Shown one piece after another: positions 2,276 through 60,401 of a stretch of 64,000 nt of DNA; within the stretch, counting starts at the first letter, position 1; the number at the start of each line of letters is the position of its first letter. The notes beneath the pieces are model-generated. The model did no database searches, was not told where the DNA came from, and saw only the letters and a list, made by a program, of their open reading frames with translations. Location: positions 1 to 64,000 of the IMG/VR virus record IMGVR_UViG_3300010938_000951. The stretch is one strand, 5' to 3'. The translations under genes and the position numbers were made by a program.

Positions 2276-2647
2276 ATGACTGATCGAGATGATTTCAGAG
2301 GCGGAATGCCTGCTCCACGAAAGACTCAAGCATACTCTTTTGTTGAGCCACAGAGAGTAGTGAACGTAGGAGAGCGCTCAGTGGAACCAACTATTCCAAT
2401 GGAAGCTATGGAAATTCTCTCTGTCAAAGATGTTGTTCATCGTTTGATTGAGCGCAATCTTCAAGCATGGAAAGCTTTGCCAGAACGCATCCGAGATAAG
2501 ATGCTGGAAAGTCCACAAGATTTTCAGCTTATTATGAATAAGCTTGCCAAAGAAGGCGATTTTGATTACAATATTCTATACAATGGTACTGTGTGGCGCT
2601 ATCACAATACTGCCCTTGTATGGATGATTTCTGATATCATACGATGA
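2276..2647 (+). CDS. hypothetical protein
   Basis: ORF downstream of promoter. Confidence 0.6.
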   Translation: MTDRDDFRGGMPAPRKTQAYSFVEPQRVVNVGERSVEPTIPMEAMEILSVKDVVHRLIERNLQAWKALPERIRDKMLESPQDFQLIMNKLAKEGDFDYNILYNGTVWRYHNTALVWMISDIIR

Positions 2648-3147
2648 AAATAGTATTTCTTGACATAGACGGTGTGTTCAATTCGGCCAACTACAACAAC
2701 TCAGAGAGATATCTCTTAGAAACTGCGGGTATGTCAGACGCCGAGATTATGTTGATTGCGCACCACACTCATCTCGACCCTCTATCAATTCAAATATTCA
2801 ATGATTTGATTAAGCGATCTGGAGCTGTAGTTGTTTTATCTTCTACATGGCGAGCCCGTTATTCTCCCGAAGAGATGACCAAGATGCTACAGGATCGAGG
2901 TGCCGAGTTTGAGATTAAGGAATCCACACCAATTCTTTTTGGTAAGATGTCCTCTCGTATCCCAAGAGGAAAAGAGATTGCTGCCTATTTAAAAGGATTA
3001 CAAGAGCAACCAGAGTCATTTGTTATTCTTGATGATCATGATGATATGTTACATCTTAAGCCGTTTCTTATTCAAACATCTGTAAAAACGGGTATTACTA
3101 TTCAAGATGTTGAAAAGGCTCTCAAAATTCTAAACGGAGACAAGTAA
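2644..3147 (+). CDS. HAD-family phosphatase (Swiss-army-knife RNA-repair-like HAD)
   Basis: FLDIDGV motif I, VVLSSTWR, RGKEI, FVILDD. Confidence 0.8.
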   Translation: MKIVFLDIDGVFNSANYNNSERYLLETAGMSDAEIMLIAHHTHLDPLSIQIFNDLIKRSGAVVVLSSTWRARYSPEEMTKMLQDRGAEFEIKESTPILFGKMSSRIPRGKEIAAYLKGLQEQPESFVILDDHDDMLHLKPFLIQTSVKTGITIQDVEKALKILNGDK

Positions 3148-8531: not shown

Positions 8532-8822
8532 ATGAAAGTTTATTTATTAACAATATTTTTGTGTGCCTGCGCTACAGGGGTTTCCGATCCAATTGATGAT
8601 CCTGTAGTAGAAATTCCTGAGAATAAATCTGCTCCTAAACCAGCACCAACAACACCTTCTGCTTCTTCTTGTGAGGTAGATAGTTATTGGTCGGGTAATT
8701 GTTTTATTAAAAAGACTTATTGTTCTAATCAATTAGAACGAATTGATGTAATGTGTGATAGGGGCAGAAAGCTGTTTCCCTGGGAATATATTCCTGATCC
8801 TCCATTTGATGGTACAAAATAA
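8532..8822 (+). CDS. putative lipoprotein
   Basis: hydrophobic N-terminus with LCAC lipobox-like site, Pro-rich linker. Confidence 0.55.
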   Translation: MKVYLLTIFLCACATGVSDPIDDPVVEIPENKSAPKPAPTTPSASSCEVDSYWSGNCFIKKTYCSNQLERIDVMCDRGRKLFPWEYIPDPPFDGTK

Positions 8823-10441
8823 TGTCCTCAGAAGAAAACCTAATTCAAGTTCGCAAGGATAAGCATCAAGAAATTAATAGCGGCACTTATCCATTAGCCA
8901 GCGATCCGGCAACATTGCCATTTATCACTCATACTAATATTGAGCATGTTCGTCGTATGATTGATCTATTGCGAAATAATGGCAAGTTAGTTACTTCTGT
9001 ATCACCATCTGAATTGGGGGATACTGATAAGTACATCATCAGAGGCCGCATTGCGGCTTTGCGTAAGTCAGGAGCAATTACGTTCATTCGAGTGACTGAT
9101 GCTTCAGGGTCTATACAAGTTATTGTAAGTAAGTCGGCTTTTGATAGCTATGAAAAGCTCAAGCTGCTTGATCTAGGAGACATTGTAGAAATTGGTGGTC
9201 GCGCCTGCCAATCTAAGACTGGCGAAGATTCTTTGCTAGCTTTTACTGTGCGCGTTCTAACCAAGGCACATCGTCCACCACCTGAAAAGTTTGCAGGCAT
9301 TGCAGATCAAGAGCTTAAGTATCGTAAGAGATATCTTGATTTAATGTCTTCAGAAGAGAGTCGCGCTAGGTTTACTGTCCGCGCCTATGCTCTTCGAGCC
9401 ATTCGTGAATTTATGGAGTCTCATACTTTCCTAGAAGTAGAAACTCCTACGCTTGGCGCGATTGCAAGTGGTGCCAACGCTAAGCCATTCATTACGCATC
9501 ACAATGCTTTGGATATGGATATGCGATTGAGAATTGCTCCCGAGCTTTATCTCAAGAGGTTGCTTGTTGGTGGTCTTGATAGAGTGTACGAGATTGGTCG
9601 CAACTATCGTAATGAAGGTATTGATACACGCCACAATCCAGAATTCACTATGATGGAGAGTTATCAAGCATACGGAAATTTCCAACAGCTTGTTAATTTT
9701 GCAAAGCAACTACTACAACATGTAGTATCTTATCTATCTAATAATCTTCCTCCAAGTGCTGCTCCCTTCTATAAGCGGTGGTTGGATGAGGCCCCATATG
9801 AATTTTATCATTGCGTAGATATCAGTATGGAGCAGGCTGCTCTTAACGCTTTAGAGAAGATGGATATGAGAGCAGATGAAGAGTTTGCAATCATTGAATT
9901 CAATCATCTAAATGATGAGGCTCCACCAGAAGCAGTCAAGCGTCGTACAAGCGGAATCAATTGGGTTGCCTTTCACCATTTACTAGGTGAGTGTCAATCC
10001 CGTGGTGAAAGGGTTGCTCTTTGTTTTGAAACGTTTGCCGAACCATTCTTAGTAGATGATTATCGTAATGAATCTGGAAATAAGTCGGTTCCGGTATTCA
10101 TTACTGACTACCCAAAGGATATCTCTCCTTTGGCTAGGGCAAAAGATTCTGATCCATCGATTTGTGATCGATTTGAATTGTTTGTAGATGGTCGAGAATT
10201 GGCAAATGCATTTCAGGAACTAAACGATCCGGAAGAACAAGCTCTTCGTTTTCAGGAACAGTTGGATGCTAACAATAAGGATCCAATGGATTTTGATGCC
10301 GATTATGTAGAGGCATTGGAACATGGTATGCCACCTGCTATTGGATTTGGGATTGGCATTGATAGATTAGTGATGTTACTTACTAATACCACATCTATCA
10401 AGGATGTAATCCTATTTCCAACCTTACGACCGGAGAAGTAA
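8822..10441 (+). CDS. lysS: lysine--tRNA ligase (class II)
   Basis: OB anticodon domain, YRKRYLDL, LRIAPELYLKRL, RNEGID..HNPEFT, ELANAFQELNDP, GMPPAIGFGIGIDRL. Confidence 0.97.
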   Translation: MSSEENLIQVRKDKHQEINSGTYPLASDPATLPFITHTNIEHVRRMIDLLRNNGKLVTSVSPSELGDTDKYIIRGRIAALRKSGAITFIRVTDASGSIQVIVSKSAFDSYEKLKLLDLGDIVEIGGRACQSKTGEDSLLAFTVRVLTKAHRPPPEKFAGIADQELKYRKRYLDLMSSEESRARFTVRAYALRAIREFMESHTFLEVETPTLGAIASGANAKPFITHHNALDMDMRLRIAPELYLKRLLVGGLDRVYEIGRNYRNEGIDTRHNPEFTMMESYQAYGNFQQLVNFAKQLLQHVVSYLSNNLPPSAAPFYKRWLDEAPYEFYHCVDISMEQAALNALEKMDMRADEEFAIIEFNHLNDEAPPEAVKRRTSGINWVAFHHLLGECQSRGERVALCFETFAEPFLVDDYRNESGNKSVPVFITDYPKDISPLARAKDSDPSICDRFELFVDGRELANAFQELNDPEEQALRFQEQLDANNKDPMDFDADYVEALEHGMPPAIGFGIGIDRLVMLLTNTTSIKDVILFPTLRPEK

Positions 10442-14695: not shown

Positions 14696-15527
14696 CTGTC
14701 ATGTCCATTTGGGACGCAACGATCATATTAAGGCTAATGTAAGTGAATTACTTACATCTATGGATGGAGCAAAGATTGACAAAGCCATGGTGTTTGCTGG
14801 CGATCTGAATGCTTATCCAACTTATGAGATGCTAAAAGAAATTGAGCCATACCGTGACAGATTGTATGGAGTGGCTGCTTGGAATTTTGGGCATGTCGTT
14901 AATATCACTTCACCAGAATATGGGGCGTGGGCTCTTGGTACACCTCAACGAGATATTTACCGCAAGTTATACCATGCAGGATTAATTTCTGCCGTTAAAT
15001 TCTATACAGGCTATGATCATTACATGCCTAATGGAGAACAAGTTAGGTACGCCTTAGATGAATTAAACAAAGTAAAATGCCCAGTTATCTTTCATATGGG
15101 AGATTGTTTAAATTCTGTGCATCGTGCCAAACTTAAGTATGCGCACCCTTTACACATCGATGATATTGCGGTAGATTATCCCGATATTAATTTCATCATT
15201 GCCCATATGGGATATCCATGGGTCCGTGATACAGCCGAAGTTTGCTATAAGAACAAAAATGTTTTTACCGATATTTCTGGTTTTGTTTATGGAGAATTCA
15301 ATAAGGATGATGTAGGAAAATTTGGTAAGACACTACAGGAGTTTTTAGATATTGCTGACAGTAGTAAACTATTGTTTGGTACGGATTGGCCAATTTCCAA
15401 TCAACGTTCATATCTAGAAACACTAGACTACCTTGCAAATGTTGCTCCGTCCTTAAAAATGAGAGAAATTCTTTCACCTCAATATATGACCAAGAATACT
15501 CAACAAGCATTCAAACTCAATGTCTAA
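14685..15527 (+). CDS. amidohydrolase family (TIM-barrel metal hydrolase)
   Basis: IIDCHVH, FHMG, IAHMGYPW, LFGTDWP. Confidence 0.9.
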   Translation: MIIDCHVHLGRNDHIKANVSELLTSMDGAKIDKAMVFAGDLNAYPTYEMLKEIEPYRDRLYGVAAWNFGHVVNITSPEYGAWALGTPQRDIYRKLYHAGLISAVKFYTGYDHYMPNGEQVRYALDELNKVKCPVIFHMGDCLNSVHRAKLKYAHPLHIDDIAVDYPDINFIIAHMGYPWVRDTAEVCYKNKNVFTDISGFVYGEFNKDDVGKFGKTLQEFLDIADSSKLLFGTDWPISNQRSYLETLDYLANVAPSLKMREILSPQYMTKNTQQAFKLNV

Positions 15528-16134
15528 GCTAAAGATTAGAACCCAAGGAGATATGGCTGCTGGTTCCATCAAGCATCGTATTGCTATGGAAGATCCGGAA
15601 GCTAACTATCGAGATTGGAATAAAAACGTAGCAGATTCTTTAAAGGGAAAGTCTGATGAAGAAATCCGACAAATCCTTCGGGCTACTGCTAATCCTTTCT
15701 CAGTGTGTTTTGAACACTGGCTGGGTGATTTTAATATGGCTACTGGTATTAGAAATGCTAATGGTTTCAATGCTAAAGAAATTTTTTACATTGGAGATAA
15801 GAAGTGGGATCGGCGTGGAGCAGTAGGCGTTCATAATTATACAGAAGTTCAATGGATTCCTACTGTTAGCGATCTGGCTTCTCTACAAAACAAATATACT
15901 TTTGTAGGCATTGATAACGTTCCGGGTTCGGTACCTATGGCTGATTATGAGTGGCCAGAGAATACTCTAATGATTTTCGGAGAAGAGGGGCCGGGACTGA
16001 CGCCAGCTATGCAGTCCTTCTGCAAAGATATTGTTCACATAGAAATGTTTGGTAGTGTTCGATCTTTTAATTGTGGATCGGCCTCGGCTATTGCTATGTA
16101 TGACTTTGTTACAAAGTATAGGGCAAAACTATGA
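15520..16134 (+). CDS. TrmH/SpoU family RNA 2'-O-methyltransferase
   Basis: NMATGIRNA, IFGEEGPG, IEMFGSVRSFNCGSA (SPOUT motifs). Confidence 0.85.
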   Translation: MSKLKIRTQGDMAAGSIKHRIAMEDPEANYRDWNKNVADSLKGKSDEEIRQILRATANPFSVCFEHWLGDFNMATGIRNANGFNAKEIFYIGDKKWDRRGAVGVHNYTEVQWIPTVSDLASLQNKYTFVGIDNVPGSVPMADYEWPENTLMIFGEEGPGLTPAMQSFCKDIVHIEMFGSVRSFNCGSASAIAMYDFVTKYRAKL

Positions 16135-41202: not shown

Positions 41203-41285
41203 GGGGGAGTAGCTCAGAGAAAGAGCGCAAGGAGTCCGTAAGGAAAACCTTGAGGTCCCAGGTTTAATTCCTGGCTCCCCCACCA
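41203..41285 (+). ncRNA. tRNA-like RNA with anticodon loop replaced by a GNRA hairpin
   Basis: GGGGGAG/CTCCCCC-ACCA; CAAGG[AG-TCC-GTAA-GGA-AAA]CCTTG. Confidence 0.75.
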
Positions 41286-41326: not shown

Positions 41327-41403
41327 GGGACAGTAGCTCAGTGTTAGAGCACCGGCCTTTAACTGCCGGGGGTCGCTGGTTCAACTCCATGCCTGTCCCA
41401 CCA
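41327..41403 (+). tRNA. atypical tRNA with 8-nt anticodon loop CTTTAACT (identity undetermined)
   Basis: GGGACAG/CTGTCCC-ACCA; bulged T stem. Confidence 0.65.
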
Positions 41404-41463
41404 AACCGAATGCAAGTAGGATTACATCGGATTAAAAATAATCTTACTAACCTTTCGTCGGTT
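41404..41463 (+). ncRNA. Y-like scaffold RNA 1 (no cargo)
   Basis: AACCGA/TCGGTT and AGTAGGATTA/TAATCTTACT stems; CCGAATG and GGATTACAT motifs. Confidence 0.7.
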
Positions 41464-41951: not shown

Positions 41952-42059
41952 TGACGAATGCCCGAAAGGGTTTACATTGTATGCGAAACAATCCGATGGA
42001 GTTCGATTCTCCTTTAAGGCTGGTGCCAGGTAAAACAACTCTTTCATTATTAGTCGTCA
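41952..42059 (+). ncRNA. Y-like scaffold RNA 2 (anticodon arm GCG plus T arm)
   Basis: TGACGA/TCGTCA, GAAAGGGTT/AACTCTTTC; ATTGT-ATGCGAA-ACAAT; GGAG-TTCGATT-CTCC. Confidence 0.75.
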
Positions 42060-42403: not shown

Positions 42404-42536
42404 TCAGCAAATGCCTGTAGGGATTACATTGCATTTGGAGCACGAGGAGAAGGTCCGATTCCTTCCGGCCCGACCATATCGGGACGAGGTGTTATGGCAG
42501 CACGCGTAAAAATAGTCTCTCAATTCTTGTTGCTGA
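42404..42536 (+). ncRNA. Y-like scaffold RNA 4 (circularly permuted Pro-type tRNA)
   Basis: TCAGCAA/TTGCTGA scaffold; order anticodon, T arm, CGGCCCG-ACCA, CGGGACG, D arm. Confidence 0.8.
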
Positions 42537-42815
42537 ATATCTTCGCATTAGTGTAATAGCTAGTGCGAGGACCATGAGGTCACTCAACTGAAACCTCATC
42601 CATCTAAACGGTCGTCCATTATCGGTTAGAGGAAAATGTAAAGTGGACGTAGCCACAAGGTTCCCAGCGATCGAATGGCTACATTATATTGTTTGAAACT
42701 ATCACTGGGGGCGTAATCGGTTGCGCTTGATATTCCGATGACTAATGGGAGTGAAGATAGTTCCATTGCAGCCCGCAGCTATCACGATATAGTAACTCAG
42801 CGGGATGCGTTTTAT

Positions 42816-42889
42816 TCCGAGGTCGTTCAAAGGCAGGACGGGTCGCTGTTAACGACTCTATGTTGGTTCGATTCCAGCCCTCGGAGCCA
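42816..42889 (+). tRNA. tRNA-Asn(GTT)
   Basis: cloverleaf, loop CTGTTAA. Confidence 0.92.
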
Positions 42890-42892
42890 TAT

Positions 42893-42979
42893 TCTGCGGT
42901 AGCCTAATGGTAAGGCAGGCGGCTGTTAACCGCCCGGTGGTAAAACACTTTCTAGGTTCGAGTCCTAGCTGCAGAGCCA
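42893..42979 (+). tRNA. tRNA-Asn(GTT) with long variable arm
   Basis: loop CTGTTAA; extra arm GGTG-GTAAAA-CACT. Confidence 0.85.
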
Positions 42980-42987
42980 AATAATAC

Positions 42988-43342
42988 GGGGACTGATTAG
43001 ACTGGAATGATCCGTATTAGGTGTTGCGTTTGGTCAGTTCTGCGCAACGACAGGAGTTGTCACCGGAACTTTAACCCGGCCAATCTTCTGAGATGAATGC
43101 GGTAAGGACTACATTACTAATAGCGATCCGCAAGGACAACCCACTCCTTTACAGTACACAAGAGCGGTAGAAAATGCAAACTGAGTACCTGACAAACTTG
43201 ATAACCAGTAAAGCTTCAAGTGTAGGCGGTGAACTACTAAAATTTGCTGCGGACCTTATCGATATCCATAACAGGACTCTTTAAGCAAACCCGCTGTCTT
43301 TACTACCTCTTGTATTGAAATACAAGTTCTTGTCATCAATCT
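42988..43342 (+). ncRNA. unknown ~350-nt structured RNA
   Basis: no ORF; long-range pairings GACAGGAGTTGT/ACAAGTTCTTGTC and ACAAGAG(C)GGTAG/CTACCTCTTGT. Confidence 0.5.
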
Positions 43343-43344
43343 AT

Positions 43345-43419
43345 TCCGCTCTAGTGTAATTAGCACGACGATCCTTTTTCGGGTCGGGGGTCATGGTTCG
43401 AGTCCATGGGGCGGAGCCA
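43345..43419 (+). tRNA. atypical tRNA (T-rich anticodon loop, identity undetermined)
   Basis: TCCGCTC/GGGCGGA-GCCA; arm CGATC-CTTTTTCG-GGTCG. Confidence 0.65.
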
Positions 43420-43689: not shown

Positions 43690-44118
43690 ATGTTTACATC
43701 TACCGGAATCTTGCATTATGATCCCGGCTTGGGATCTAAACAATATGACCCTTGGTGGGCTCTTCTAATCTGTGACGATGAAGTGTCTAGGTATTATGCC
43801 TGGTTATTAAAGAGAAATGGAGTAGAAGTTTATCCCAATGATAAAGGATTGTGGGGCACACACGTTTCAGTTTTGAAAGGTCAAATCCCAGAAAATACGA
43901 CTAATTGGGGGAAATACGAAGGCTACGAAGTAGAATTCCATTACAATCATCTTGTCCGTTATGATAACGGTAAACATGCTTGGGTGGATGTATATTCCGA
44001 AGATTTATCGTATATACGTCAAGAATTAGGATTCGAGGCAAAGCCCTGGTATCACTTGACAATAGGAAGATTAGTTAGGCCATATGCAGTAGACTTTACA
44101 AAGTATGGCATAACATGA
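43690..44118 (+). CDS. 2H phosphoesterase-like protein
   Basis: two HxS/T motifs: THVSV and YHLTI. Confidence 0.65.
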   Translation: MFTSTGILHYDPGLGSKQYDPWWALLICDDEVSRYYAWLLKRNGVEVYPNDKGLWGTHVSVLKGQIPENTTNWGKYEGYEVEFHYNHLVRYDNGKHAWVDVYSEDLSYIRQELGFEAKPWYHLTIGRLVRPYAVDFTKYGIT

Positions 44119-44216: not shown

Positions 44217-44291
44217 GCCTCCGTACGCATCTGGTGAAGCGGGGTGATTGTCAATCATCTGAGGGCGGTTCGATTCCGCTCGGGGGCGCCA
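44217..44291 (+). tRNA. tRNA-Asp(GTC)
   Basis: cloverleaf, loop TTGTCAA. Confidence 0.85.
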
Positions 44292-44362
44292 AGCCAAATG
44301 CCTTGATAGGATTACATTGAACTGTTAATTCAAACCTATATCTTATCTAATTTTTGTTGGCT
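44292..44362 (+). ncRNA. Y-like scaffold RNA 5 (isolated Asn anticodon stem-loop)
   Basis: AGCCAA/TTGGCT, GATAGGAT/ATCTTATC; cargo TTGAA-CTGTTAA-TTCAA. Confidence 0.8.
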
Positions 44363-44366
44363 ACAT

Positions 44367-44445
44367 CGGACAAAAGGTAAGCTGGTGGCATCCGGAAGTC
44401 TTATAAACTTCTCATAGGAGGGTTCGATTCCCTCTTGTCCGACCA
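44367..44445 (+). tRNA. tRNA-Ile(TAT)
   Basis: CGGACAA/TTGTCCG-ACCA, GAAGT-CTTATAA-ACTTC. Confidence 0.8.
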
Positions 44446-44557: not shown

Positions 44558-44702
44558 GACAGAATGCCCCGAAGGAATACATAGAACAGCAATTGAATGA
44601 AAATCAATAGATTGTAGGTGCGAATCCTACCTCTCCCACCAATAATAAGATATATGGGAGGGAAGCTAAATAAAACAAACTTCTTTCAAATCTTTGTCTG
44701 TC
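44558..44702 (+). ncRNA. Y-like scaffold RNA 6 (circularly permuted tRNA-Phe)
   Basis: GACAGA/TCTGTC; ATTGA-ATGAAAA-TCAAT, T arm, CTCTCCC-ACCA, linker, GGGAGGG. Confidence 0.8.
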
Positions 44703-44705
44703 AAT

Positions 44706-44781
44706 GGAGCTTGAGCAAGTGTGGTCATTGCATCGGTCTGAAAAGCCGACAAATCCGGTTCGATCCCGGAAGGCTCCACCA
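44706..44781 (+). tRNA. tRNA-Phe(GAA)
   Basis: loop CTGAAAA, CCA. Confidence 0.85.
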
Positions 44782-45520: not shown

Positions 45521-45660
45521 TGAAACAAATGCTCGCAGAGGATTACATCGCATATCCAGCGGGTTACGTGAGTGCGAATCTCACTCTCAGCTCATTATGC
45601 TGAGATCGTCTAGCAGTCTAGGACACCTAAAAAATAGTCTTCTCAATTCTTGTTGTTTCA
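45521..45660 (+). ncRNA. Y-like scaffold RNA 7 (circularly permuted Gly-type tRNA)
   Basis: TGAAACAA/TTGTTTCA; CGC-ATATCCA-GCG, T arm, TCTCAGC/GCTGAGA, D arm. Confidence 0.8.
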
Positions 45661-45667
45661 CAATTAT

Positions 45668-45863
45668 GCCTCCTATCATGGCTGGAAACTGATAGCGATA
45701 CCACCAGGCGGTCCCAGAGGGATGCAGCAGGGGAAGTACAAGAGTATCAAACAGAAGGGACGCCTTCTAGCCTGCTCACATGGTTGGAAACTGTGACGCG
45801 GTCTTGGTCGCGATAGACCAAGTAGTAAAACCGCAAGCCTGCCCACATGGTCGGAAACTGTGG
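45668..45863 (+). repeat. three copies of a hairpin with conserved core CATGGYYGGAAACTG
   Basis: copies at 45668, 45770 and 45837 with co-varying stems. Confidence 0.75.
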
Positions 45864-45866
45864 AAA

Positions 45867-45943
45867 GAATCGTCTAGCTCAATGGTAGAGCTACGTCACT
45901 AGTGACGACGTGGATCTGGGTTCGAATCCCAGGATGATTCCCA
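45867..45943 (+). tRNA. His-like tRNA (G-1:C73) with 9-nt anticodon loop
   Basis: GAATCGTC/GATGATTC-CCA; ACGTC-ACTAGTGAC-GACGT. Confidence 0.7.
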
Positions 45944-45945
45944 GC

Positions 45946-46097
45946 GAAGCAAATGCCCCGAAGGTTTACATTTGAGAAACTGTATTATCGCAAGATAGTC
46001 GTGGGTTCGAATCCCACATCACCGCAAGGTGATTGGCTGAGTGGTCTAAAGCGACAGTGCCGCAAGGCATGCTAACTTTCAAATTTTTTGTTGCTTC
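45946..46097 (+). ncRNA. Y-like scaffold RNA 8 (YrlA-like, permuted class II tRNA)
   Basis: GAAGCAA/TTGCTTC; variable arm, GTGGG-TTCGAAT-CCCAC, acceptor ATCACC-GCAA-GGTGAT, D arm. Confidence 0.85.
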
Positions 46098-46098
46098 A

Positions 46099-46228
46099 TC
46101 TCCCGCTAGTTTAAAACGAAACACCTGTTATAGAGGACGTATACTTCAATCTATGAGGGGTTAGTAGTCCAGAAGAATACCTTCCAGTGAGGAAGGAGAT
46201 GCGAGTGCAAGTCTCGCAAGGGAGACCA
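46099..46228 (+). ncRNA. tRNA-like RNA with ~55-nt insert between D and anticodon arms
   Basis: TCTCCC/GGGAGA-CCA, CCTTC-CAGTGAG-GAAGG, GCGAG-TGCAAGT-CTCGC. Confidence 0.65.
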
Positions 46229-46232
46229 ATTT

Positions 46233-47674: not shown

Positions 47675-47796
47675 TATAAGTTTAGGAAGCAAAACAAAGT
47701 ACCTGCTGTTCAAGGGAAAGTTTTGATGAGGAGAGCCGGAACAGGGCAATCCTAAGTTAGGGGTGGACTCAACATCCAACCGCCGCTTCCGCTTAT

Positions 47797-53063: not shown

Positions 53064-53137
53064 TCTCCGATCGTCTAATGGTAGGACGGGTCGCTCTGAA
53101 CGATCAAATCGAGGTTCGAATCCTCAGCGGAGAACCA
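53064..53137 (+). tRNA. tRNA-Gln(CTG)
   Basis: loop CTCTGAA, ACCA. Confidence 0.82.
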
Positions 53138-53297
53138 GCAACAAATGCCAGCTAGGATTACATAGCTCGCAACTATTTTCCCCGCCAGCCCGAGAGGGCA
53201 AATAAACTTTTATTTTTTATGTTACTAACACGGGGAAATGTTCAAGTCGGTCTGAAAAACCGATAAGGAACTCTTCTTGGCACCTTTAGTTGTTGCT
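53137..53297 (+). ncRNA. Y-like scaffold RNA 9 (two anticodon-like stem-loops)
   Basis: AGCAACAA/TTGTTGCT, GGATTACAT; ATAG-CTCGCAA-CTAT and TCGGT-CTGAAAA-ACCGA. Confidence 0.7.
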
Positions 53298-53303
53298 AAA
53301 TAT

Positions 53304-53404
53304 AGCAGATTGGAGCAGCGGTAGCTCGCCAGGTTCACAATGGGGCTGATGCCCTATAAGGATACCCTGGAGGTCGTGTGGTTCGATTCCCTCATCTGCA
53401 ACCA
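53304..53404 (+). tRNA. initiator-type tRNA-Met with 25-nt insert in the anticodon
   Basis: 1:72 mismatch, TGGAGCAG..GGTAGCTCG D arm; CCAGG-TTCA[25 nt]TAC-CCTGG. Confidence 0.8.
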
Positions 53405-57830: not shown

Positions 57831-58169
57831 GTGAAAGTTATGAGCTTACCTTGGTCACGAGATATGCAATTAGATCCTGGCACATTTGGAGGGTCTCCAG
57901 CATGTCATGTATTAGTTGATATGATGAACAAAAATGTGATTCCTGTTCAGGAAAAACATCGAGTTCTATCATTCATTAGCGGTACTATTTTGCATTTCAA
58001 GGCCATCTCTGCCATCAAAGAAAGAGGTATAAGGGCACGGGTTATGGTGCTTTTGAAAAATGATCTGTTTTCCAGAATAGATCAAATGCCATATCCAGCT
58101 CATTTCAACTCTTATCTGAAGAACGTAGTAAATCACCACTTCAGGCGATACTTAAAAGAAGTAGTCTAG
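57831..58169 (+). CDS. hypothetical protein
   Basis: ORF whose end overlaps RNase P helix P1. Confidence 0.5.
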   Translation: MKVMSLPWSRDMQLDPGTFGGSPACHVLVDMMNKNVIPVQEKHRVLSFISGTILHFKAISAIKERGIRARVMVLLKNDLFSRIDQMPYPAHFNSYLKNVVNHHFRRYLKEVV

Positions 58170-58488
58170 ACAATCGCTCTGCAAGGAGAGGAAAGTCGGA
58201 GCTACATAGGACAGTCTGCTGGCTAACGGCCAGGCGTAGTAATACGACGGAAAGTGCAACAGAAAATAAACCGCCCGCAAGGGTAAGGGTGAAATGGTGA
58301 GGTAAGAGCTTACCGCATGTTTGGCGACAAATATGGCAAGGCAAACCCCAGATGTAGCAAGCTAAACAGAGAGTGACTTGTCCGGTCAATACTCTCGGGT
58401 TAGTGCTGGAGCCGTCAAGTAATTGTCGGCCAAGATTAATGATTGTCTCGATTTATAGACAGAACTCCGCTTATAGGGCTACTTCTTT
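58155..58488 (+). ncRNA. rnpB: RNase P RNA (bacterial type A)
   Basis: P1 AAGAAGTAGTC/GGCTACTTCTT; GAGGAAAGTCGGAGC, GGAAAGTGCAACAGAAA, GGGTGAAA..GGTAAGAGC, GGCAAACCCC, ACAGAACTCCGCTTA with compensatory P4. Confidence 0.95.
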
Positions 58489-58510
58489 TAAGTTCTTTTA
58501 AGGAATTATT

Positions 58511-59040: not shown

Positions 59041-59733
59041 ATGGCAGATAAAGTTACCACCGTTAGCGCAAAAGGTTGCGTTGTAACAGATTTTGATACG
59101 GCTACATTTGCACTCTCATTTAATGAGTTTGCTCCTAAAGCCAAAGACGCAAAGCTGAAGCTAAAGAAAGGTGCAGCTAAGATTACAGCGGCCCTTGATG
59201 ATCTCAAGAAACGTGGGTTGGAGTTTTTAACCAACAACTATCGCACTAATATTACAGTGCAACCAAATTATGTTTATGACCGTTCGTCCGGCCAAAACAG
59301 AATGGAAGGACAGAAGGCAACTTACTCTGTAACGTTCCAAACTCCTACACTAGAAATGGTTAGTGAAGCATACGATCTACTTTCTGAATTGGAAGTGAAT
59401 GAACTTTCAATTAATTCTCCTGCTTATTCTGTCAGGTCCGAAGCGCAATTTAAGCAACAAGCATTGGAAGATGCTTGGAAGGTAGCTCAAGTTTTGTTTG
59501 CTAATCAGTGCAAGGTTCTTGGGTTTGATGAAACTAAATTCTCTGTTGATAGCTGGCAGGTTAATTATAGTGGCCATGACCATGGTGGATTTGCTAAGGG
59601 TCGTAGCTATTCAAACTCTGTGCTAGCGGCATCAGCTTCGGCTGATTATGGTGATGAAGCCATTGAACTAAATGCTGGCCGTGCTATCATTGAAGTAGTT
59701 CTGACTGTCGATTACGTTCGTACCGGATCATGA
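59041..59733 (+). CDS. SIMPL (DUF541) domain protein
   Basis: VTTVSAKG...D.A, ITVQPNY.Y, QQALEDA pattern. Confidence 0.7.
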   Translation: MADKVTTVSAKGCVVTDFDTATFALSFNEFAPKAKDAKLKLKKGAAKITAALDDLKKRGLEFLTNNYRTNITVQPNYVYDRSSGQNRMEGQKATYSVTFQTPTLEMVSEAYDLLSELEVNELSINSPAYSVRSEAQFKQQALEDAWKVAQVLFANQCKVLGFDETKFSVDSWQVNYSGHDHGGFAKGRSYSNSVLAASASADYGDEAIELNAGRAIIEVVLTVDYVRTGS

Positions 59734-60401
59734 AAATTAAGCTAGCCTATCCTAAAATTCCTGATACTTTAGACTGTCCACTCAAGCAATGTATTGCTTT
59801 TGAAAAATTGGATGGAACTAATTTGCATTGGGTTTGGAATAGGGAAAAAGGCTGGCATGCTTTTGGTACTCGCCGAGATAGATTTAATCTAGATGAACAA
59901 GGAATTGCTTCTTTCAACCAAGCACATCCCGGACTGGAGGAAGCAATTTCCTTGTTTAGAAAATCGTATGAGCATCTCGCTGAGTATCCACTTAAACATA
60001 AATATGGTCCAATATCAGAATCCACGGGTGACGTAATTCTATTTACAGAGTTCCTTGGAGATAAATCTTTTGCTGGTTCTCACCAAAAAGGCGACCCCAA
60101 AAGATTAGTATTATTTGATGTAATGACTGATAAAGGAATAACTCCACCAGATCAGTTTGTGATTGATTTTGGACAGTTTGATGATATTCCGGGATATTAT
60201 ATTCCACAAATTGTTTTTAGTGGAAAGTTTTCAGGACAATTATTTGTAGATGTTAGGAAAAACAAGTTCAAAGTAAACGAGGGCGTGGTTGTCAAAGGTA
60301 TGTTTGCCGGGCAAGTTTACATGGCCAAGATTAAGACGACTGACTATTTAGAGCGCCTAAAGAAAGAATTTAAAAACGATTGGAAAAATTATTGGGAATG
60401 A
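59730..60401 (+). CDS. RNA ligase (Rnl2-like adenylyltransferase domain)
   Basis: YPKI, EKLDGTN, TEFLG, LFDV, EGVVVK, AKIKT. Confidence 0.85.
   Translation: MKIKLAYPKIPDTLDCPLKQCIAFEKLDGTNLHWVWNREKGWHAFGTRRDRFNLDEQGIASFNQAHPGLEEAISLFRKSYEHLAEYPLKHKYGPISESTGDVILFTEFLGDKSFAGSHQKGDPKRLVLFDVMTDKGITPPDQFVIDFGQFDDIPGYYIPQIVFSGKFSGQLFVDVRKNKFKVNEGVVVKGMFAGQVYMAKIKTTDYLERLKKEFKNDWKNYWE

What the first reader, a model, noticed from the sequence alone, without database searches (positions are those of the whole stretch)
44292..44362. Y-like scaffold displaying only a perfect Asn anticodon stem-loop
Seen: the whole cargo is TTGAA-CTGTTAA-TTCAA, a 5-bp stem with the same 7-nt loop as the two tRNA-Asn genes at 42816 and 42893. 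It cannot be charged, so it is the cleanest candidate anticodon decoy. Established: colicin E5-type nucleases and the queuosine enzyme Tgt recognise GUN anticodon loops in small hairpins.
Basis: partly seen in the sequence, partly recalled or inferred. Interest (0 to 1): 0.8.

Follow-up and report, generated by a model that had tools for sequence, protein, structure and literature searches.

The report
Minimal phage Y RNA showing anticodon-like loop
This 71-base stretch is a stripped-down Y RNA (the small-RNA partner of the Ro60/Rsr protein) inside a giant phage's tRNA gene array; its only appendage is a small hairpin whose loop copies the tRNA-Asn anticodon loop, and relatives conserve that loop, so the published idea that Y RNAs compete with tRNA-cutting enzymes can now be tested.

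Summary
Positions 44317-44333 form TTGAA-CTGTTAA-TTCAA, with the same 7-nt loop as both tRNA-Asn genes. The "Y-like scaffold" reading is also correct. The element (44292-44362) has the YrlA architecture: helix P1, an AUGC/…UUUG internal loop, helix P2, then UUAC. It lies 9.2 kb downstream of a phage Ro60/Rsr gene on the same strand, and it is one of nine such elements among the tRNA genes. Both scaffold helices covary strongly across related phages and bacteria.

Most minimal relatives have no cargo. A subfamily of 12-14 elements keeps a short apical hairpin with loop consensus C-Y-K-U-U-A-A, usually followed by U.
- One orthologue has the identical loop on a different, compensated stem.
- Two orthologues read CCGUUAA and one reads CCUUUAC.
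- Two orthologous elements are empty, and two related phages have no element at that site.

The loop is therefore under selection, but the conserved part is N-U-U-A-A(U), shared by Asn and Lys. It is not the U-G-U needed by colicin E5 or Tgt.

Best reading: an Rsr-bound minimal Y RNA, released by tRNA processing, that presents an Asn/Lys-type anticodon-arm mimic. A decoy role is plausible but untested. Verdict: a new variant of a known kind.

The parts
44292..44362 (+). Whole minimal Y-RNA-like (Yrl) element, 71 nt: P1, internal loop, P2, UUACAU, apical hairpin P3
   Evidence: Covariance models of the family: R1 64.5 bits, E 1e-14; R2 75.2 bits. MFE fold equals centroid fold.
44292..44297 (+). 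P1 5' strand AGCCAA. With the next bases it reads GCCAAAUG, one base (G to A, compensated in P1) off the YrlA motif GNCGAAN0-1G
   Evidence: Sequence. P1 pairs covary: 5 of 6 pairs change on both sides, 97% paired. Motif from PMC4201824.
44298..44304 (+). 5' side of the internal loop, AUGCCUU; the AUGC is invariant in the family
   Evidence: Invariant columns in A1 and A3. The Rfam YrlA consensus has the same AUGC after its first helix.
44305..44312 (+). P2 5' strand GATAGGAT
   Evidence: Pairs with 44340-44347. In P2, 8 of 9 pairs change on both sides across 25 distinct sequences. Orthologue L003 shows a compensatory G.U to U-A change.
44312..44317 (+). UUACAU; contains the YUAY that follows the scaffold helix in YrlA
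   Evidence: Nearly invariant in A1 and A3. YUAY described in PMC4201824.
44317..44333 (+). P3 apical hairpin TTGAA-CTGTTAA-TTCAA. Loop is 44322-44328, numbered as anticodon-loop positions 32-38, with GUU at 34-36. U36-A37-A38-U39 is 44326-44329
   Evidence: In P3, 3 of 4 modelled pairs change on both sides in 12 hairpin-bearing relatives. The loop is identical in L185, L158 and L169.
44340..44347 (+). P2 3' strand ATCTTATC
44348..44356 (+). 3' side of the internal loop, UAAUUUUUG. The family consensus is AAUUYUUG, and the Rfam YrlA consensus has aAaAcUuG at the same place
44357..44362 (+). P1 3' strand TTGGCT
44217..44291 (+). tRNA-Asp(GTC) ending in CCA directly before the element; its 3' processing would set the element's 5' end (inferred)
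   Evidence: ARAGORN and Rfam.
44367..44445 (+). tRNA-Ile(TAT) starting 4 nt after the element; RNase P cleavage at its 5' end would release the element's 3' end (inferred)
   Evidence: ARAGORN.
33424..35115 (+). Phage Ro60/Rsr orthologue (TROVE plus Ro60-type vWA domains), the presumed protein partner
   Evidence: Pfam vWA_Ro60 9e-15 and TROVE 4e-10. NCBIfam Rsr 64.6 bits, far below its curated 900-bit cutoff. Near-full-length matches to Ro60 structures 9KOP and 2NVO.
41404..41463 (+). Sibling A: empty scaffold with no cargo
41952..42059 (+). Sibling B: first hairpin TTGT-ATGCGAA-ACAA, then a T arm and a D-arm remnant
42404..42536 (+). Sibling C: small hairpin, T arm, closed acceptor hairpin whose loop begins CCA, D-like arm
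43092..43337 (+). Sibling D: scaffold with a roughly 200-nt cargo conserved in L003, L005 and L008
44558..44702 (+). Sibling F: Phe-type anticodon arm ATTGA-ATGAAAA-TCAAT, T arm, acceptor 3' strand plus CCA, loop, acceptor 5' strand
   Evidence: Weak Rfam tRNA hit at 44571-44638. The L005 orthologue has a compensated stem.
45521..45660 (+). Sibling G: hairpin plus a full T / closed-acceptor / D tRNA-like domain
45946..46097 (+). Sibling H: classical YrlA-like T / acceptor / D domain
   Evidence: Rfam YrlA positions 26-82, 26.3 bits, E 5.6e-4 on this stretch.
53137..53297 (+). Sibling I: cargo includes TCGGT-CTGAAAA-ACCGA, nearly identical to the anticodon arm of tRNA-Phe 44706
42816..42979 (+). 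The two tRNA-Asn(GTT) genes, both with loop CTGTTAA
41101..41128 (+). Promoter-like site (TTGACG, 16 nt, TACAAT) just upstream of the first tRNA of the array; a candidate array promoter
   Evidence: Consensus scan only.
58158..58489 (+). Phage-encoded RNase P RNA (class A), the likely processing enzyme for the array
   Evidence: Rfam 279.9 bits.

Best explanation
Positions 44292-44362 encode a roughly 71-nt minimal Y RNA (Yrl) of the YrlA scaffold type. From 5' to 3' it has closing helix P1 carrying a near-copy of the Ro60/Rsr-recognition motif, the conserved AUGC/...UUUG internal loop, helix P2 and UUAC. Where YrlA has its T / acceptor / D tRNA-like domain, this element has a single 5-bp hairpin with an anticodon-type 7-nt loop. 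It is one of nine Yrl genes interleaved with tRNA genes downstream of the phage's own rsr gene. Inferred steps: it is co-transcribed with the array, cut out by the enzymes that mature the flanking tRNA-Asp and tRNA-Ile (the phage encodes its own RNase P RNA), and bound by phage Rsr through the P1/internal-loop region. Shown: the apical hairpin is under purifying selection, with loop consensus C-Y-K-U-U-A-A followed by U and a covarying stem. Inferred: the hairpin is the effector module of the RNP. It presents an uncharged mimic of the anticodon arm of NUU tRNAs (Asn/Lys) to a protein that reads that arm, most plausibly as a competitor of a Lys/Asn-directed anticodon nuclease, in a phage that also carries tRNA-repair genes.
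For: Scaffold. The 5' motif occurs 10 times in the window against 1.4 expected. Covariance model R1 finds 35 elements in the window and related phage loci; 91% of cells are paired, 13 of 15 pairs change on both sides, and 0 of 500 shuffles reach this. The Rfam YrlA consensus shows the same helix / AUGC / helix / YUA ... cUuG / helix layout. Siblings H and G contain YrlA-like T / acceptor / D domains. An Rsr gene lies at 33424-35115 on the same strand. In other genomes the same minimal elements sit directly after rsr or between rsr and rtcB (L158, L177, L166, L180), next to sub-threshold but significant YrlA hits. [quoted passage not shown] Loop. It is identical to both tRNA-Asn loops, and only 2 of 286 background hairpins match any anticodon loop, both in Yrl elements. 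Orthologue L185 has stem AUUUA/UAAAU with an unchanged loop; L187 and an X11 contig have UUGA-CCGUUAA-UCAA. CUGUUAA recurs in L158 and L169, CUUUUAA in L169 and L142. P3 covaries. Context. The window encodes an RNA ligase, a SAK-type HAD domain, LysRS and RNase P RNA. The rsr-yrl-rtcBA operon is induced by anticodon-loop-cleaved tRNAs, and YrlA has been proposed as a competitive inhibitor of the nuclease (PMC7790460). PARIS AriB targets Lys(UUU), Thr(UGU) and Asn(GUU), which share U36-A-A-U39 (PMC12409363). That UAAU is present in the target and in most hairpin-bearing relatives.
Against: There are no expression, processing or binding data; the only read data are DNA contigs. The target does not reach any Rfam threshold. 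Its motif is GCCAAAUG rather than GNCGAAUG. It lies 9.2 kb from rsr, whereas published YrlA genes lie within 4 kb. U33, almost universal in tRNAs, is C in L187, X11, L003, L188 and L005, and some relatives have 6-nt loops (L144, a second X11 contig). Most minimal family members are empty, and the orthologous position is empty (L008, L138) or lacks an element (L005, L007), so the hairpin is dispensable. The bias to U-rich loops fits the already known 'pyrimidine-rich loop' class of Y RNAs without any anticodon logic. The P3 covariation counts come from an alignment fitted to the model.
Confidence: 0.6

Rival explanations
1. [quoted passage not shown] The likeness to an anticodon loop is incidental to a U-rich, U-turn-type loop.
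For: Chen et al. report that each studied bacterium has such a Y RNA beside the tRNA-like one (PMC4201824). The loop consensus C-Y-K-U-U-A-A is U-rich, and U33 is often C. 6-nt variants CUUUUA and AUUUUA occur. Empty scaffolds are the commonest form. Phage Ro60 with Yrl RNAs and host PNPase form complexes (PMC12135203).
Against: Seven or eight relatives have the exact C-U-NNN-A-A anticodon format with different triplets: GUU, UUU, GUA, CGA. Larger siblings carry true anticodon arms at the same position; F is Phe-type, and I nearly copies the arm of tRNA-Phe. B-type orthologues swap between anticodon-format loops on similar stems.
Confidence: 0.3
2. One reading: a decoy specifically for GUN-reading enzymes (colicin-E5-type tRNases) or a substrate or sponge for the queuosine enzyme Tgt.
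For: The target has U33-G34-U35 in a 7-nt hairpin loop, which is the stated minimal determinant for Tgt (PMC10103133) and the shared UQU of colicin E5 substrates (PMC1635277). UGU is also present in L185, L158, L169 and L177.
Against: UGU is lost in the orthologues L187 and X11 (CGU), L003 (CUU) and the second X11 contig, and in L169a, L142, L188 and L005. Position 34 is one of the two variable loop positions, while U35, U36 and A37 are invariant. No tgt or queuosine gene was seen among the roughly 55 window ORFs scanned.
Confidence: 0.1
3. It is a decaying remnant. A tRNA-like Yrl lost its T, acceptor and D arms, the leftover anticodon-type hairpin has no function of its own, and it is on the way to the empty state.
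For: There is a graded series in the family from full tRNA-like cargo (G, H) to partial (B, F), hairpin only (E) and empty (A). Orthologous positions are empty or lack an element.
Against: L185 changed about 9 of the 15 apical positions around the loop, including a compensated stem, but 0 of the 7 loop positions. L187 and X11 show a paired deletion that keeps the stem. The same loop is kept on unrelated scaffolds in rsr-adjacent loci of other phyla.
Confidence: 0.07
4. It is not a trans-acting RNA but a cis punctuation or processing element of the tRNA array, for example an RNase entry site or a spacer that helps folding of neighbouring pre-tRNAs.
For: It is wedged between two tRNA genes with 0 and 4 nt of spacer, and family members are scattered through arrays.
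Against: The same elements occur directly after rsr and before rtcB without flanking tRNAs, and as tandem runs after rsr in Undibacterium isolates. The scaffold is the YrlA scaffold. Many tRNA junctions in the array lack it.
Confidence: 0.05

Closest known systems
YrlA (Y RNA-like A; Rfam RF02553; Chen et al. 2014, PMC4201824)
   Same: Same scaffold order and letters: first helix containing the (G)NC(G/A)AA motif, AUGC, second helix, YUAY, and on the 3' side an A-rich ...CUUG segment before the closing strand. Encoded on the same strand as a Ro60/Rsr gene. Siblings G and H have the T arm, closed acceptor stem and D arm.
   Different: The target has no tRNA-like domain at all and does not reach the Rfam score. 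It lies 9.2 kb rather than under 4 kb from rsr. It is embedded in a tRNA array and is one of nine copies. It displays an anticodon-type loop, which YrlA lacks because in YrlA the scaffold takes the place of the anticodon stem.
[quoted passage not shown]
   Same: A rod-like hairpin with an Rsr-type motif near the 5' end and a small U/C-rich apical loop. It coexists with tRNA-like Y RNAs next to rsr.
   Different: Sequence homology could not be tested because no YrlB or Yrn2 sequence was available. The loop here has exact anticodon-loop format and is identical to the tRNA-Asn loop. The element is phage-borne and lies inside a tRNA array.
Yrl1/Yrl2 of Thermus phage phiLo, bound by phage Ro60 (PMC12135203)
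   Same: Phage-encoded Ro60 plus phage-encoded stem / bulge / stem RNAs carrying a CGAA-type motif. The phiLo Ro60 structure (9KOP) is the best PDB match to the window's Rsr.
   Different: phiLo has two Yrl RNAs upstream of Ro60 and not in a tRNA array. No anticodon-type hairpin is reported for them. The proteins are distant (match E-value 1.4e-15).
Phage tRNAs that rescue from or resist anticodon nucleases (T5 tRNA-Lys, Thr and Asn against PARIS AriB, PMC11464382 and PMC12409363; phage tRNAs with anticodon-loop mutations, PMC10264068)
   Same: Sits in a large phage tRNA array with duplicated isoacceptors. It shares the U36-A-A-U39 segment common to the AriB targets Lys(UUU) and Asn(GUU). Those authors raise the possibility that viral tRNAs also act as nuclease inhibitors.
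   Different: It is not a tRNA: it cannot be charged or used in translation, so it could act only by binding. It is mounted on an Rsr-binding scaffold. No nuclease was identified here.
Anticodon stem-loop minihelices used as minimal substrates of Tgt and colicin E5 (PMC10103133, PMC1635277)
   Same: A 5-bp stem and a 7-nt loop with U33-G34-U35.
   Different: This one is natural, is embedded in a larger RNA, and its UGU is not conserved in orthologues.

Membership tests
YrlA / bacterial Y RNA (Chen 2014; Rfam RF02553) | GNCGAAN0-1G motif near the 5' end | tested here: inconclusive
   The target reads GCCAAAUG, with A in place of G at the fourth position and a compensating U in the P1 3' strand. 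Sibling B has the exact GACGAAUG. At that pair the family splits G-C 13 to A-U 12.
YrlA / bacterial Y RNA (Chen 2014; Rfam RF02553) | Helix / internal loop / helix scaffold formed by the 5' and 3' ends, with AUGC on the 5' side and ...CUUG on the 3' side, followed by YUAY | tested here: met
   Fold, covariation and letter-by-letter comparison with the Rfam consensus line. UUAC lies at 44312-44315.
YrlA / bacterial Y RNA (Chen 2014; Rfam RF02553) | tRNA-like domain: T arm, closed acceptor stem, D arm | tested here: not met
   Nothing but one hairpin lies between the P2 strands, and there is no tRNA or YrlA hit on the target. Siblings G and H do have the domain.
YrlA / bacterial Y RNA (Chen 2014; Rfam RF02553) | Score at or above the Rfam gathering threshold (69 bits) | tested here: not met
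   No YrlA match covers the target even at E up to 5. The best sibling scores 26.3 bits.
YrlA / bacterial Y RNA (Chen 2014; Rfam RF02553) | Encoded near a Ro60/Rsr gene on the same strand | tested here: met
   Rsr is at 33424-35115 on the + strand and the target lies 9.2 kb downstream. This exceeds the 4 kb of the published set, but relatives sit directly after rsr.
YrlA / bacterial Y RNA (Chen 2014; Rfam RF02553) | Physically bound by Rsr and stabilised by it | not testable with these tools
   Needs co-immunoprecipitation or EMSA.
YrlB/Yrn2-type Y RNA (long hairpin, small pyrimidine-rich loop) | Rod-like hairpin ending in a small pyrimidine-rich loop | tested here: met
   Three stacked helices and a 7-nt loop CUGUUAA with 4 pyrimidines; the subfamily consensus is C-Y-K-U-U-A-A.
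YrlB/Yrn2-type Y RNA (long hairpin, small pyrimidine-rich loop) | Sequence homology to a characterised YrlB or Yrn2 | not tested
tRNA / anticodon arm | 5-bp stem and 7-nt loop with Y32, U33, triplet, R37 | tested here: met
   TTGAA-CTGTTAA-TTCAA, with a loop identical to both tRNA-Asn genes.
tRNA / anticodon arm | Acceptor stem with CCA, T arm and D arm (a chargeable tRNA) | tested here: not met
   ARAGORN and Rfam find no tRNA at 44292-44362.
tRNA / anticodon arm | U33 conserved in homologues | tested here: not met
   C33 in L187, X11, L003, L188 and L005:15327. U33 in the window, L185, L158, L169 (two elements), L142, L177 and L181.
Decoy of GUN-specific enzymes (colicin E5 type, Tgt) | U33-G34-U35 kept in orthologues | tested here: not met
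   UGU is present in 2 of 6 hairpin-bearing orthologues (window, L185). The others read CGU, CGU, CUU and UUU.
Decoy or competitor of Lys/Asn-directed anticodon nucleases (e.g. PARIS AriB, PrrC) | Carries the sequence shared by the nuclease's tRNA targets (AriB: U36-A-A-U39) | tested here: met
   UAAU lies at 44326-44329. It is also present in L185, L187, L169 (two elements), L142 and X11, but absent in L158, L003, L188 and L005 (motif from PMC12409363). Only the motif was tested.
Decoy or competitor of Lys/Asn-directed anticodon nucleases (e.g. PARIS AriB, PrrC) | Binds or inhibits the nuclease and protects tRNA or infection | not testable with these tools
   Needs cleavage and competition assays. 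The host and its defence systems are unknown.

The most novel reading that the evidence does not exclude
Rsr-Yrl particles act as a platform that displays exchangeable anticodon-arm mimics. Minimal Yrl RNAs such as this one present an uncharged Asn/Lys-type (elsewhere Tyr-, Ser- or Phe-type) anticodon arm that competes for, or senses, anticodon-directed defence nucleases of the PARIS-AriB or PrrC kind. This would give jumbo phages, and bacterial rsr-rtcB operons, an RNA-based counter-measure that works alongside spare tRNAs and RNA ligases. The rapid swapping of loop triplets on near-identical scaffolds would then reflect an arms race.
Probability: 0.2. Interest if true: 0.85.

Novelty: new variant of a known kind. 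Interest (0 to 1): 0.6.

Why it matters
What bacterial and phage Y RNAs do is still largely unknown. The published suggestion that a Y RNA could compete with an anticodon nuclease has had no natural RNA that obviously fits it. This work defines a conserved subfamily of minimal Y RNAs whose only appendage is an anticodon-type hairpin with a selected N-U-U-A-A(U) core. The same core is shared by the tRNAs cut by known anti-phage nucleases. The subfamily occurs in jumbo-phage tRNA arrays that also encode Rsr, LysRS, an RNA ligase and RNase P RNA, and in rsr-rtcB loci. That turns a vague hypothesis into simple bench experiments with a 71-nt RNA. The work also shows that phage "tRNA arrays" hide many unannotated Y RNA genes, nine in this window. 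One in the cultured Myxococcus phage Mx1 is annotated as a protein gene.

Tried and rejected
1. Rfam at gathering thresholds and at E up to 5 gave nothing on the target; only weak YrlA hits fell on siblings.
2. Megablast of the array against GenBank phages found no match.
3. A loose 15-base motif scan of IMG/VR returned mostly chance hits. The Chitinophagaceae hit I read (L165) lay inside a gene, and none of the other non-family hits of the genome scan reached the model's threshold.
4. Early in the work the only homologues were L003 (loop CCTTTAC) and L008 (no hairpin). I took the loop for unconstrained drift, and dropped that view after finding L185, L187, L158 and L169.
5. A pseudoknot between the U-rich loop and the downstream A-rich linker is possible in L142 and the window, but it is not consistent across orthologues.
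6. An origin by direct copying of a tRNA-Asn arm is not supported. The stems of the window's tRNA-Asn genes differ from TTGAA/TTCAA, unlike element I, which nearly copies a tRNA-Phe arm.
7. The hairpin-anchored and scaffold-anchored patterns found only two and three contigs in IMG/VR, and a pattern for the GGGCGA group found nothing new.
8. An Rsr protein alignment built from locus coordinates failed because of frame problems and in-frame stops, so no alignment-based locus scan was run.
9. Several encoding-contig look-ups returned no DNA or did not reach the target's position.
10. The scripting machine was lost. Later tallies were made by eye from tool output, and no composition-matched enrichment test of loops across the whole family could be run.
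11. The read data were DNA contigs only, so nothing can be said about expression.
Full report
**1.

- A 6-bp closing helix, AGCCAA/TTGGCT.
- An 8-bp second helix, GATAGGAT/ATCTTATC.
- One hairpin between them, TTGAA-CTGTTAA-TTCAA, at 44317-44333.

RNAfold returns this three-helix rod as both the minimum-energy and the centroid structure (z = -2.4). ARAGORN finds tRNA-Asn(GTT) at 42816 and 42893, and both have the loop CTGTTAA. No tRNA or other Rfam family matches the element, and it has no acceptor end, so it cannot be charged.

The loop match is unlikely to be chance. The window contains 286 hairpins with a 5-bp stem and 7-nt loop outside tRNA genes. Only two have a loop identical to any of the window's 28 anticodon loops, and both lie in members of the element family described next.

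**2. It belongs to a repeated, structured family**

The 5' motif AATGC-N-(G)ATTACAT occurs ten times in the window against 1.4 expected, and nine of the ten are family elements on the + strand in the tRNA array. Each of these nine is closed by a helix between the bases just before AATGC and a stretch 60-250 nt downstream.

The members in the window are:

| Element | Coordinates |
|---|---|
| A | 41404-41463 |
| B | 41952-42059 |
| C | 42404-42536 |
| D | 43092-43337 |
| E (target) | 44292-44362 |
| F | 44558-44702 |
| G | 45521-45660 |
| H | 45946-46097 |
| I | 53137-53297 |

A covariance model built from 12 minimal members (R1) finds 35 elements in the window and eight related phage loci, including ones with more than 100 nt of cargo. 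On the resulting alignment 91% of cells pair. Thirteen of 15 pairs change on both sides, no shuffle out of 500 reaches this, and slid registers collapse. P1 and P2 are therefore real RNA helices. All copies have the orientation of the tRNA genes.

**3. The scaffold is the YrlA (bacterial Y RNA) scaffold, and the protein partner is encoded upstream**

- ORF 33424-35115 has TROVE and Ro60-type vWA domains. It aligns almost end to end with solved Ro60 structures, best with the Thermus phage phiLo protein.
- Chen et al. (PMC4201824) define YrlA by a 5' GNCGAAN0-1G motif thought to contact Rsr, a YUAY after the scaffold, and then V, T, acceptor and D arms.
- The Rfam YrlA consensus printed reads: helix cggCga/ucGccg, AUGCu, helix uggGgaa/uucCcca, CUA ... 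aAaAcUuG.
- The family here has the same order and the same unpaired letters: P1 ending in CGA or CAA, AUGC, P2, UUAC, and AAUUYUUG before the P1 3' strand.
- Sibling B carries the exact GACGAAUG. The target has GCCAAAUG, with the G-to-A change compensated in P1; that pair is G-C in 13 and A-U in 12 distinct members.
- Sibling H matches Rfam YrlA positions 26-82, the T arm, closed acceptor and D arm. G has the same parts.

The "Y-like scaffold" reading is therefore correct. The target is such a scaffold with the tRNA-like domain missing.

**4. Context**

The window is the first 64 kb of a 267-kb IMG/VR contig. Rsr relatives at 71-91% identity sit on contigs up to 511 kb, so this is a clade of jumbo phages from soil and groundwater.

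The array holds 31 tRNA genes with many duplicated isoacceptors. The target starts directly after the CCA of tRNA-Asp and ends 4 nt before tRNA-Ile(UAU). A promoter-like site lies just upstream of the array. The phage has its own RNase P RNA. Release of the element by tRNA processing is thus the obvious route, but it is inferred, not shown.

The window also encodes several RNA-related enzymes:
- LysRS;
- an RNA ligase and a "Swiss-army-knife" RNA-repair HAD domain;
- a SpoU methylase.

Elsewhere the same minimal elements lie directly after rsr:
- in L158, right after rsr;
- in L177, between rsr and rtcB;
- in L166, just upstream of rtcB;
- in Undibacterium isolates, as five minimal elements plus one tRNA-like element after rsr.

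The L166, L177 and L180 loci also contain significant, though sub-threshold, Rfam YrlA hits. The cultured Myxococcus phage Mx1 (Rsr 52% identical) has one element between tRNA-Ile and tRNA-Asp, annotated as a hypothetical protein.

**5. The apical hairpin in relatives**

About 30 distinct minimal elements were seen, and most are empty: the apex is just UACAU plus an A-rich stretch. A subfamily keeps a short hairpin.

Elements at the orthologous site, between tRNA-Asp and tRNA-Ile(UAU):

| Source | Hairpin |
|---|---|
| Window | UUGAA-CUGUUAA-UUCAA |
| L185 (Rsr 88% identical) | AUUUA-CUGUUAA-UAAAU; same P1 and P2, about 9 of 15 neighbouring apical positions changed, 0 of 7 loop positions changed |
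| L187 (85%) and a contig in run X11 | UUGA-CCGUUAA-UCAA; one base pair removed by a paired deletion |
| L003 (86%) | UUGAA-CCUUUAC-UUCAA |
| Second X11 contig | UUUC-CUUUUA-GAAA |
| L008 and L138 | Empty scaffolds |
| L005 and L007 | No element at the site |

Elements at other sites or in other genomes:

| Source | Hairpin |
|---|---|
| L158 (next to rsr) | CUGUUAA on a CCACC/GGUAG stem |
| L169 | UCA-CUGUUAA-UGA and UCAA-CUUUUAA-UUGA |
| L142 | UAGA-CUUUUAA-UCUA |
| L177 | UUGU-CUGUAAA-ACAA |
| L181 | UUUA-CUCGAAA-UAAA |
| L188 | loop CCUUUAA |
| L005 | UUUA-CCUUUAU-UAAA |

A second model that includes P3 (R2) scores these 12-14 elements well above the empty ones. On its alignment, which is fitted to the model and so leans towards it, 3 of the 4 P3 pairs change on both sides.

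In the six hairpin-bearing orthologues C32, U35, U36 and A37 never change, and most other subfamily members keep them too. Position 39 is U in most. Positions 33 (U or C) and 34 (G or U) vary.

In larger siblings the same position holds an anticodon-format hairpin:
- F is Phe-type, with a compensated stem in L005.
- I nearly copies the anticodon arm of tRNA-Phe 44706.
- B-type orthologues show AUGCGAA, CUGUUAA, CUUGAAC and UUGGAAU on similar stems.

**6. What this means**

Shown:
- the element is a YrlA-scaffold RNA gene;
- the hairpin is a conserved, structurally maintained module;
- its loop is under purifying selection at the positions shared by Asn and Lys anticodon loops.

Inferred: it is excised from the array transcript, bound by phage Rsr, and its hairpin is the effector module.

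The published background fits a tRNA-damage setting.
- The Salmonella rsr-yrlBA-rtcBA operon is switched on by tRNA halves cut in the anticodon loop. Its authors proposed that YrlA might be a competitive inhibitor of the nuclease (PMC7790460).
- Anti-phage nucleases cut tRNA-Lys, tRNA-Tyr and tRNA-Asn, and phage tRNAs counter them (PMC11464382, PMC11555353, PMC10264068).
- PARIS AriB targets Lys(UUU), Thr(UGU) and Asn(GUU), which share U36-A-A-U39 (PMC12409363). The target has UAAU at 44326-44329, as do most hairpin-bearing relatives.

I therefore favour this reading: an Rsr-bound minimal Y RNA that presents an Asn/Lys-type anticodon-arm mimic. The mimic most plausibly acts as a competitor for a protein that reads that arm. 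I give the overall reading a confidence of 0.6, and the specific nuclease-decoy mechanism about 0.2.

**7. Rivals**

1. [quoted passage not shown] The frequent C33, the 6-nt variants and the many empty scaffolds favour this. The exact anticodon format with several different triplets, and the true anticodon arms in siblings, argue against it (0.3).
2. UGU is the documented determinant, but it is kept in only two of six hairpin-bearing orthologues, and G34 is one of the variable positions (0.1).
3. A decaying remnant. This is contradicted by the unchanged loop on a rebuilt stem in L185 and by the paired deletion in L187 (0.07).
4. A cis processing spacer. This is contradicted by copies next to rsr and rtcB that lack flanking tRNAs (0.05).

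**8. Comparison with what is known, and novelty**

The element works like, and is homologous to, bacterial and phage Y RNAs. It meets the scaffold, YUAY and rsr-linkage criteria of YrlA. It fails the tRNA-like-domain criterion and the Rfam-score criterion, so I do not file it as YrlA proper. I file it as a minimal Yrl, closest in form to YrlB/Yrn2.

The new points are:
- nine Y RNA genes interleaved in a phage tRNA array, seen in a whole clade of jumbo phages and in Mx1;
- a conserved subfamily whose sole appendage is an anticodon-format hairpin with a selected N-U-U-A-A(U) core, shared between phage arrays and rsr-rtcB loci;
- rapid exchange of the loop triplet on near-identical scaffolds (L166, L169, L177, L181).

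This makes it a new variant of a known kind.

**9. Limits**

- There is no RNA-level evidence; the runs laid were DNA contigs.
- The host is unknown.
- Some loci come from metagenome bins and may be viral rather than bacterial.
- The hairpin-bearing sample is small (12-14 elements) and partly related by descent.
- The P3 counts rest on a model-fitted alignment.
- The scripting machine was lost, so later tallies were read by eye from tool output.

Noticed in passing
window 58158-58489 (+): A full-length class A RNase P RNA (279.9 bits) is encoded by the phage itself, a few kb beyond the main tRNA array.
   Followed up: no
window 41327-41403 and 43345-43419; L007:18377-18455; L008:16250-16325; rsr genes of L005 and L007: Some tRNA genes have 8-nt anticodon loops, which ARAGORN reports as 4-base anticodons (ttaa, tttt, taat, ggaa). 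The Rsr reading frames of L005 and L007 each contain one in-frame stop. Stop-codon recoding or suppressor/frameshift tRNAs in this phage clade are possible.
   Followed up: no
window 8822-10441 (+): Phage-encoded lysyl-tRNA synthetase (NCBIfam lysS_bact 495 bits, above cutoff), together with four tRNA-Lys genes. Its anticodon-binding domain is a conceivable reader of the NUU-type loop.
   Followed up: partly
window 59730-60401, 2644-3147, 43690-44118, 15520-16134: An RNA-repair and RNA-modification toolkit: an RNA ligase, a SAK-type HAD domain, a sub-threshold 2H phosphoesterase-like ORF right upstream of the target, and a SpoU-family methylase.
   Followed up: partly
window 53137-53297 (element I), hairpin at 53247-53263: The Yrl cargo contains TCGGT-CTGAAAA-ACCGA, nearly identical to the anticodon arm of tRNA-Phe at 44706-44781. 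This looks like a recent copy of a tRNA anticodon arm into a Y RNA.
   Followed up: partly
window 43092-43337 (element D); L003:19279-19504; L005:18359-18579; L008:19465-19658: A Yrl scaffold carries a roughly 200-nt cargo that is conserved between phages and is not tRNA-like. Its function is unknown.
   Followed up: no
window 41203-41282 and 53304-53401: Rfam tRNA hits of 80 and 98 nt that ARAGORN missed. They are probably tRNA genes with an insertion or intron in or near the anticodon loop.
   Followed up: no
window 42537-42815, 45661-45867, 46098-46232, 47675-47796: Intergenic stretches inside the array with no ORF, tRNA or Yrl assignment. Some share short motifs and may be further non-coding RNAs.
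   Followed up: no
window tRNA array (e.g. 42816/42893 Asn, 47797/48105 Lys-CUU, 48398/48940 Lys-UUU): Isoacceptors come in pairs with the same anticodon loop but quite different anticodon stems. For example, position 39 is U in one tRNA-Lys copy and A or G in the other. This recalls phage tRNA variants that resist stem- or loop-directed nucleases.
   Followed up: no
L006:14629-15113; L180:640-1225 (also L157, L179, L182): Tandem runs of minimal empty Yrl genes. One jumbo phage has four copies (three identical, one near-identical) at 142-nt spacing. In four Undibacterium isolate genomes rsr is followed by five or more minimal elements; in L180, the one read, five minimal elements are followed by one tRNA-like element.
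   Followed up: partly
L184:8554-8655 (Myxococcus phage Mx1, record 45522-45623): A Yrl element between tRNA-Ile and tRNA-Asp overlaps the annotated hypothetical protein WNM70101.1. That CDS is probably a mis-call.
   Followed up: partly
window 35152-36828 (+): A 558-aa ORF directly after rsr has no Pfam or NCBIfam match. It is absent at that position in close relatives (L185, L187), so it looks like a lineage-specific insertion.
   Followed up: no
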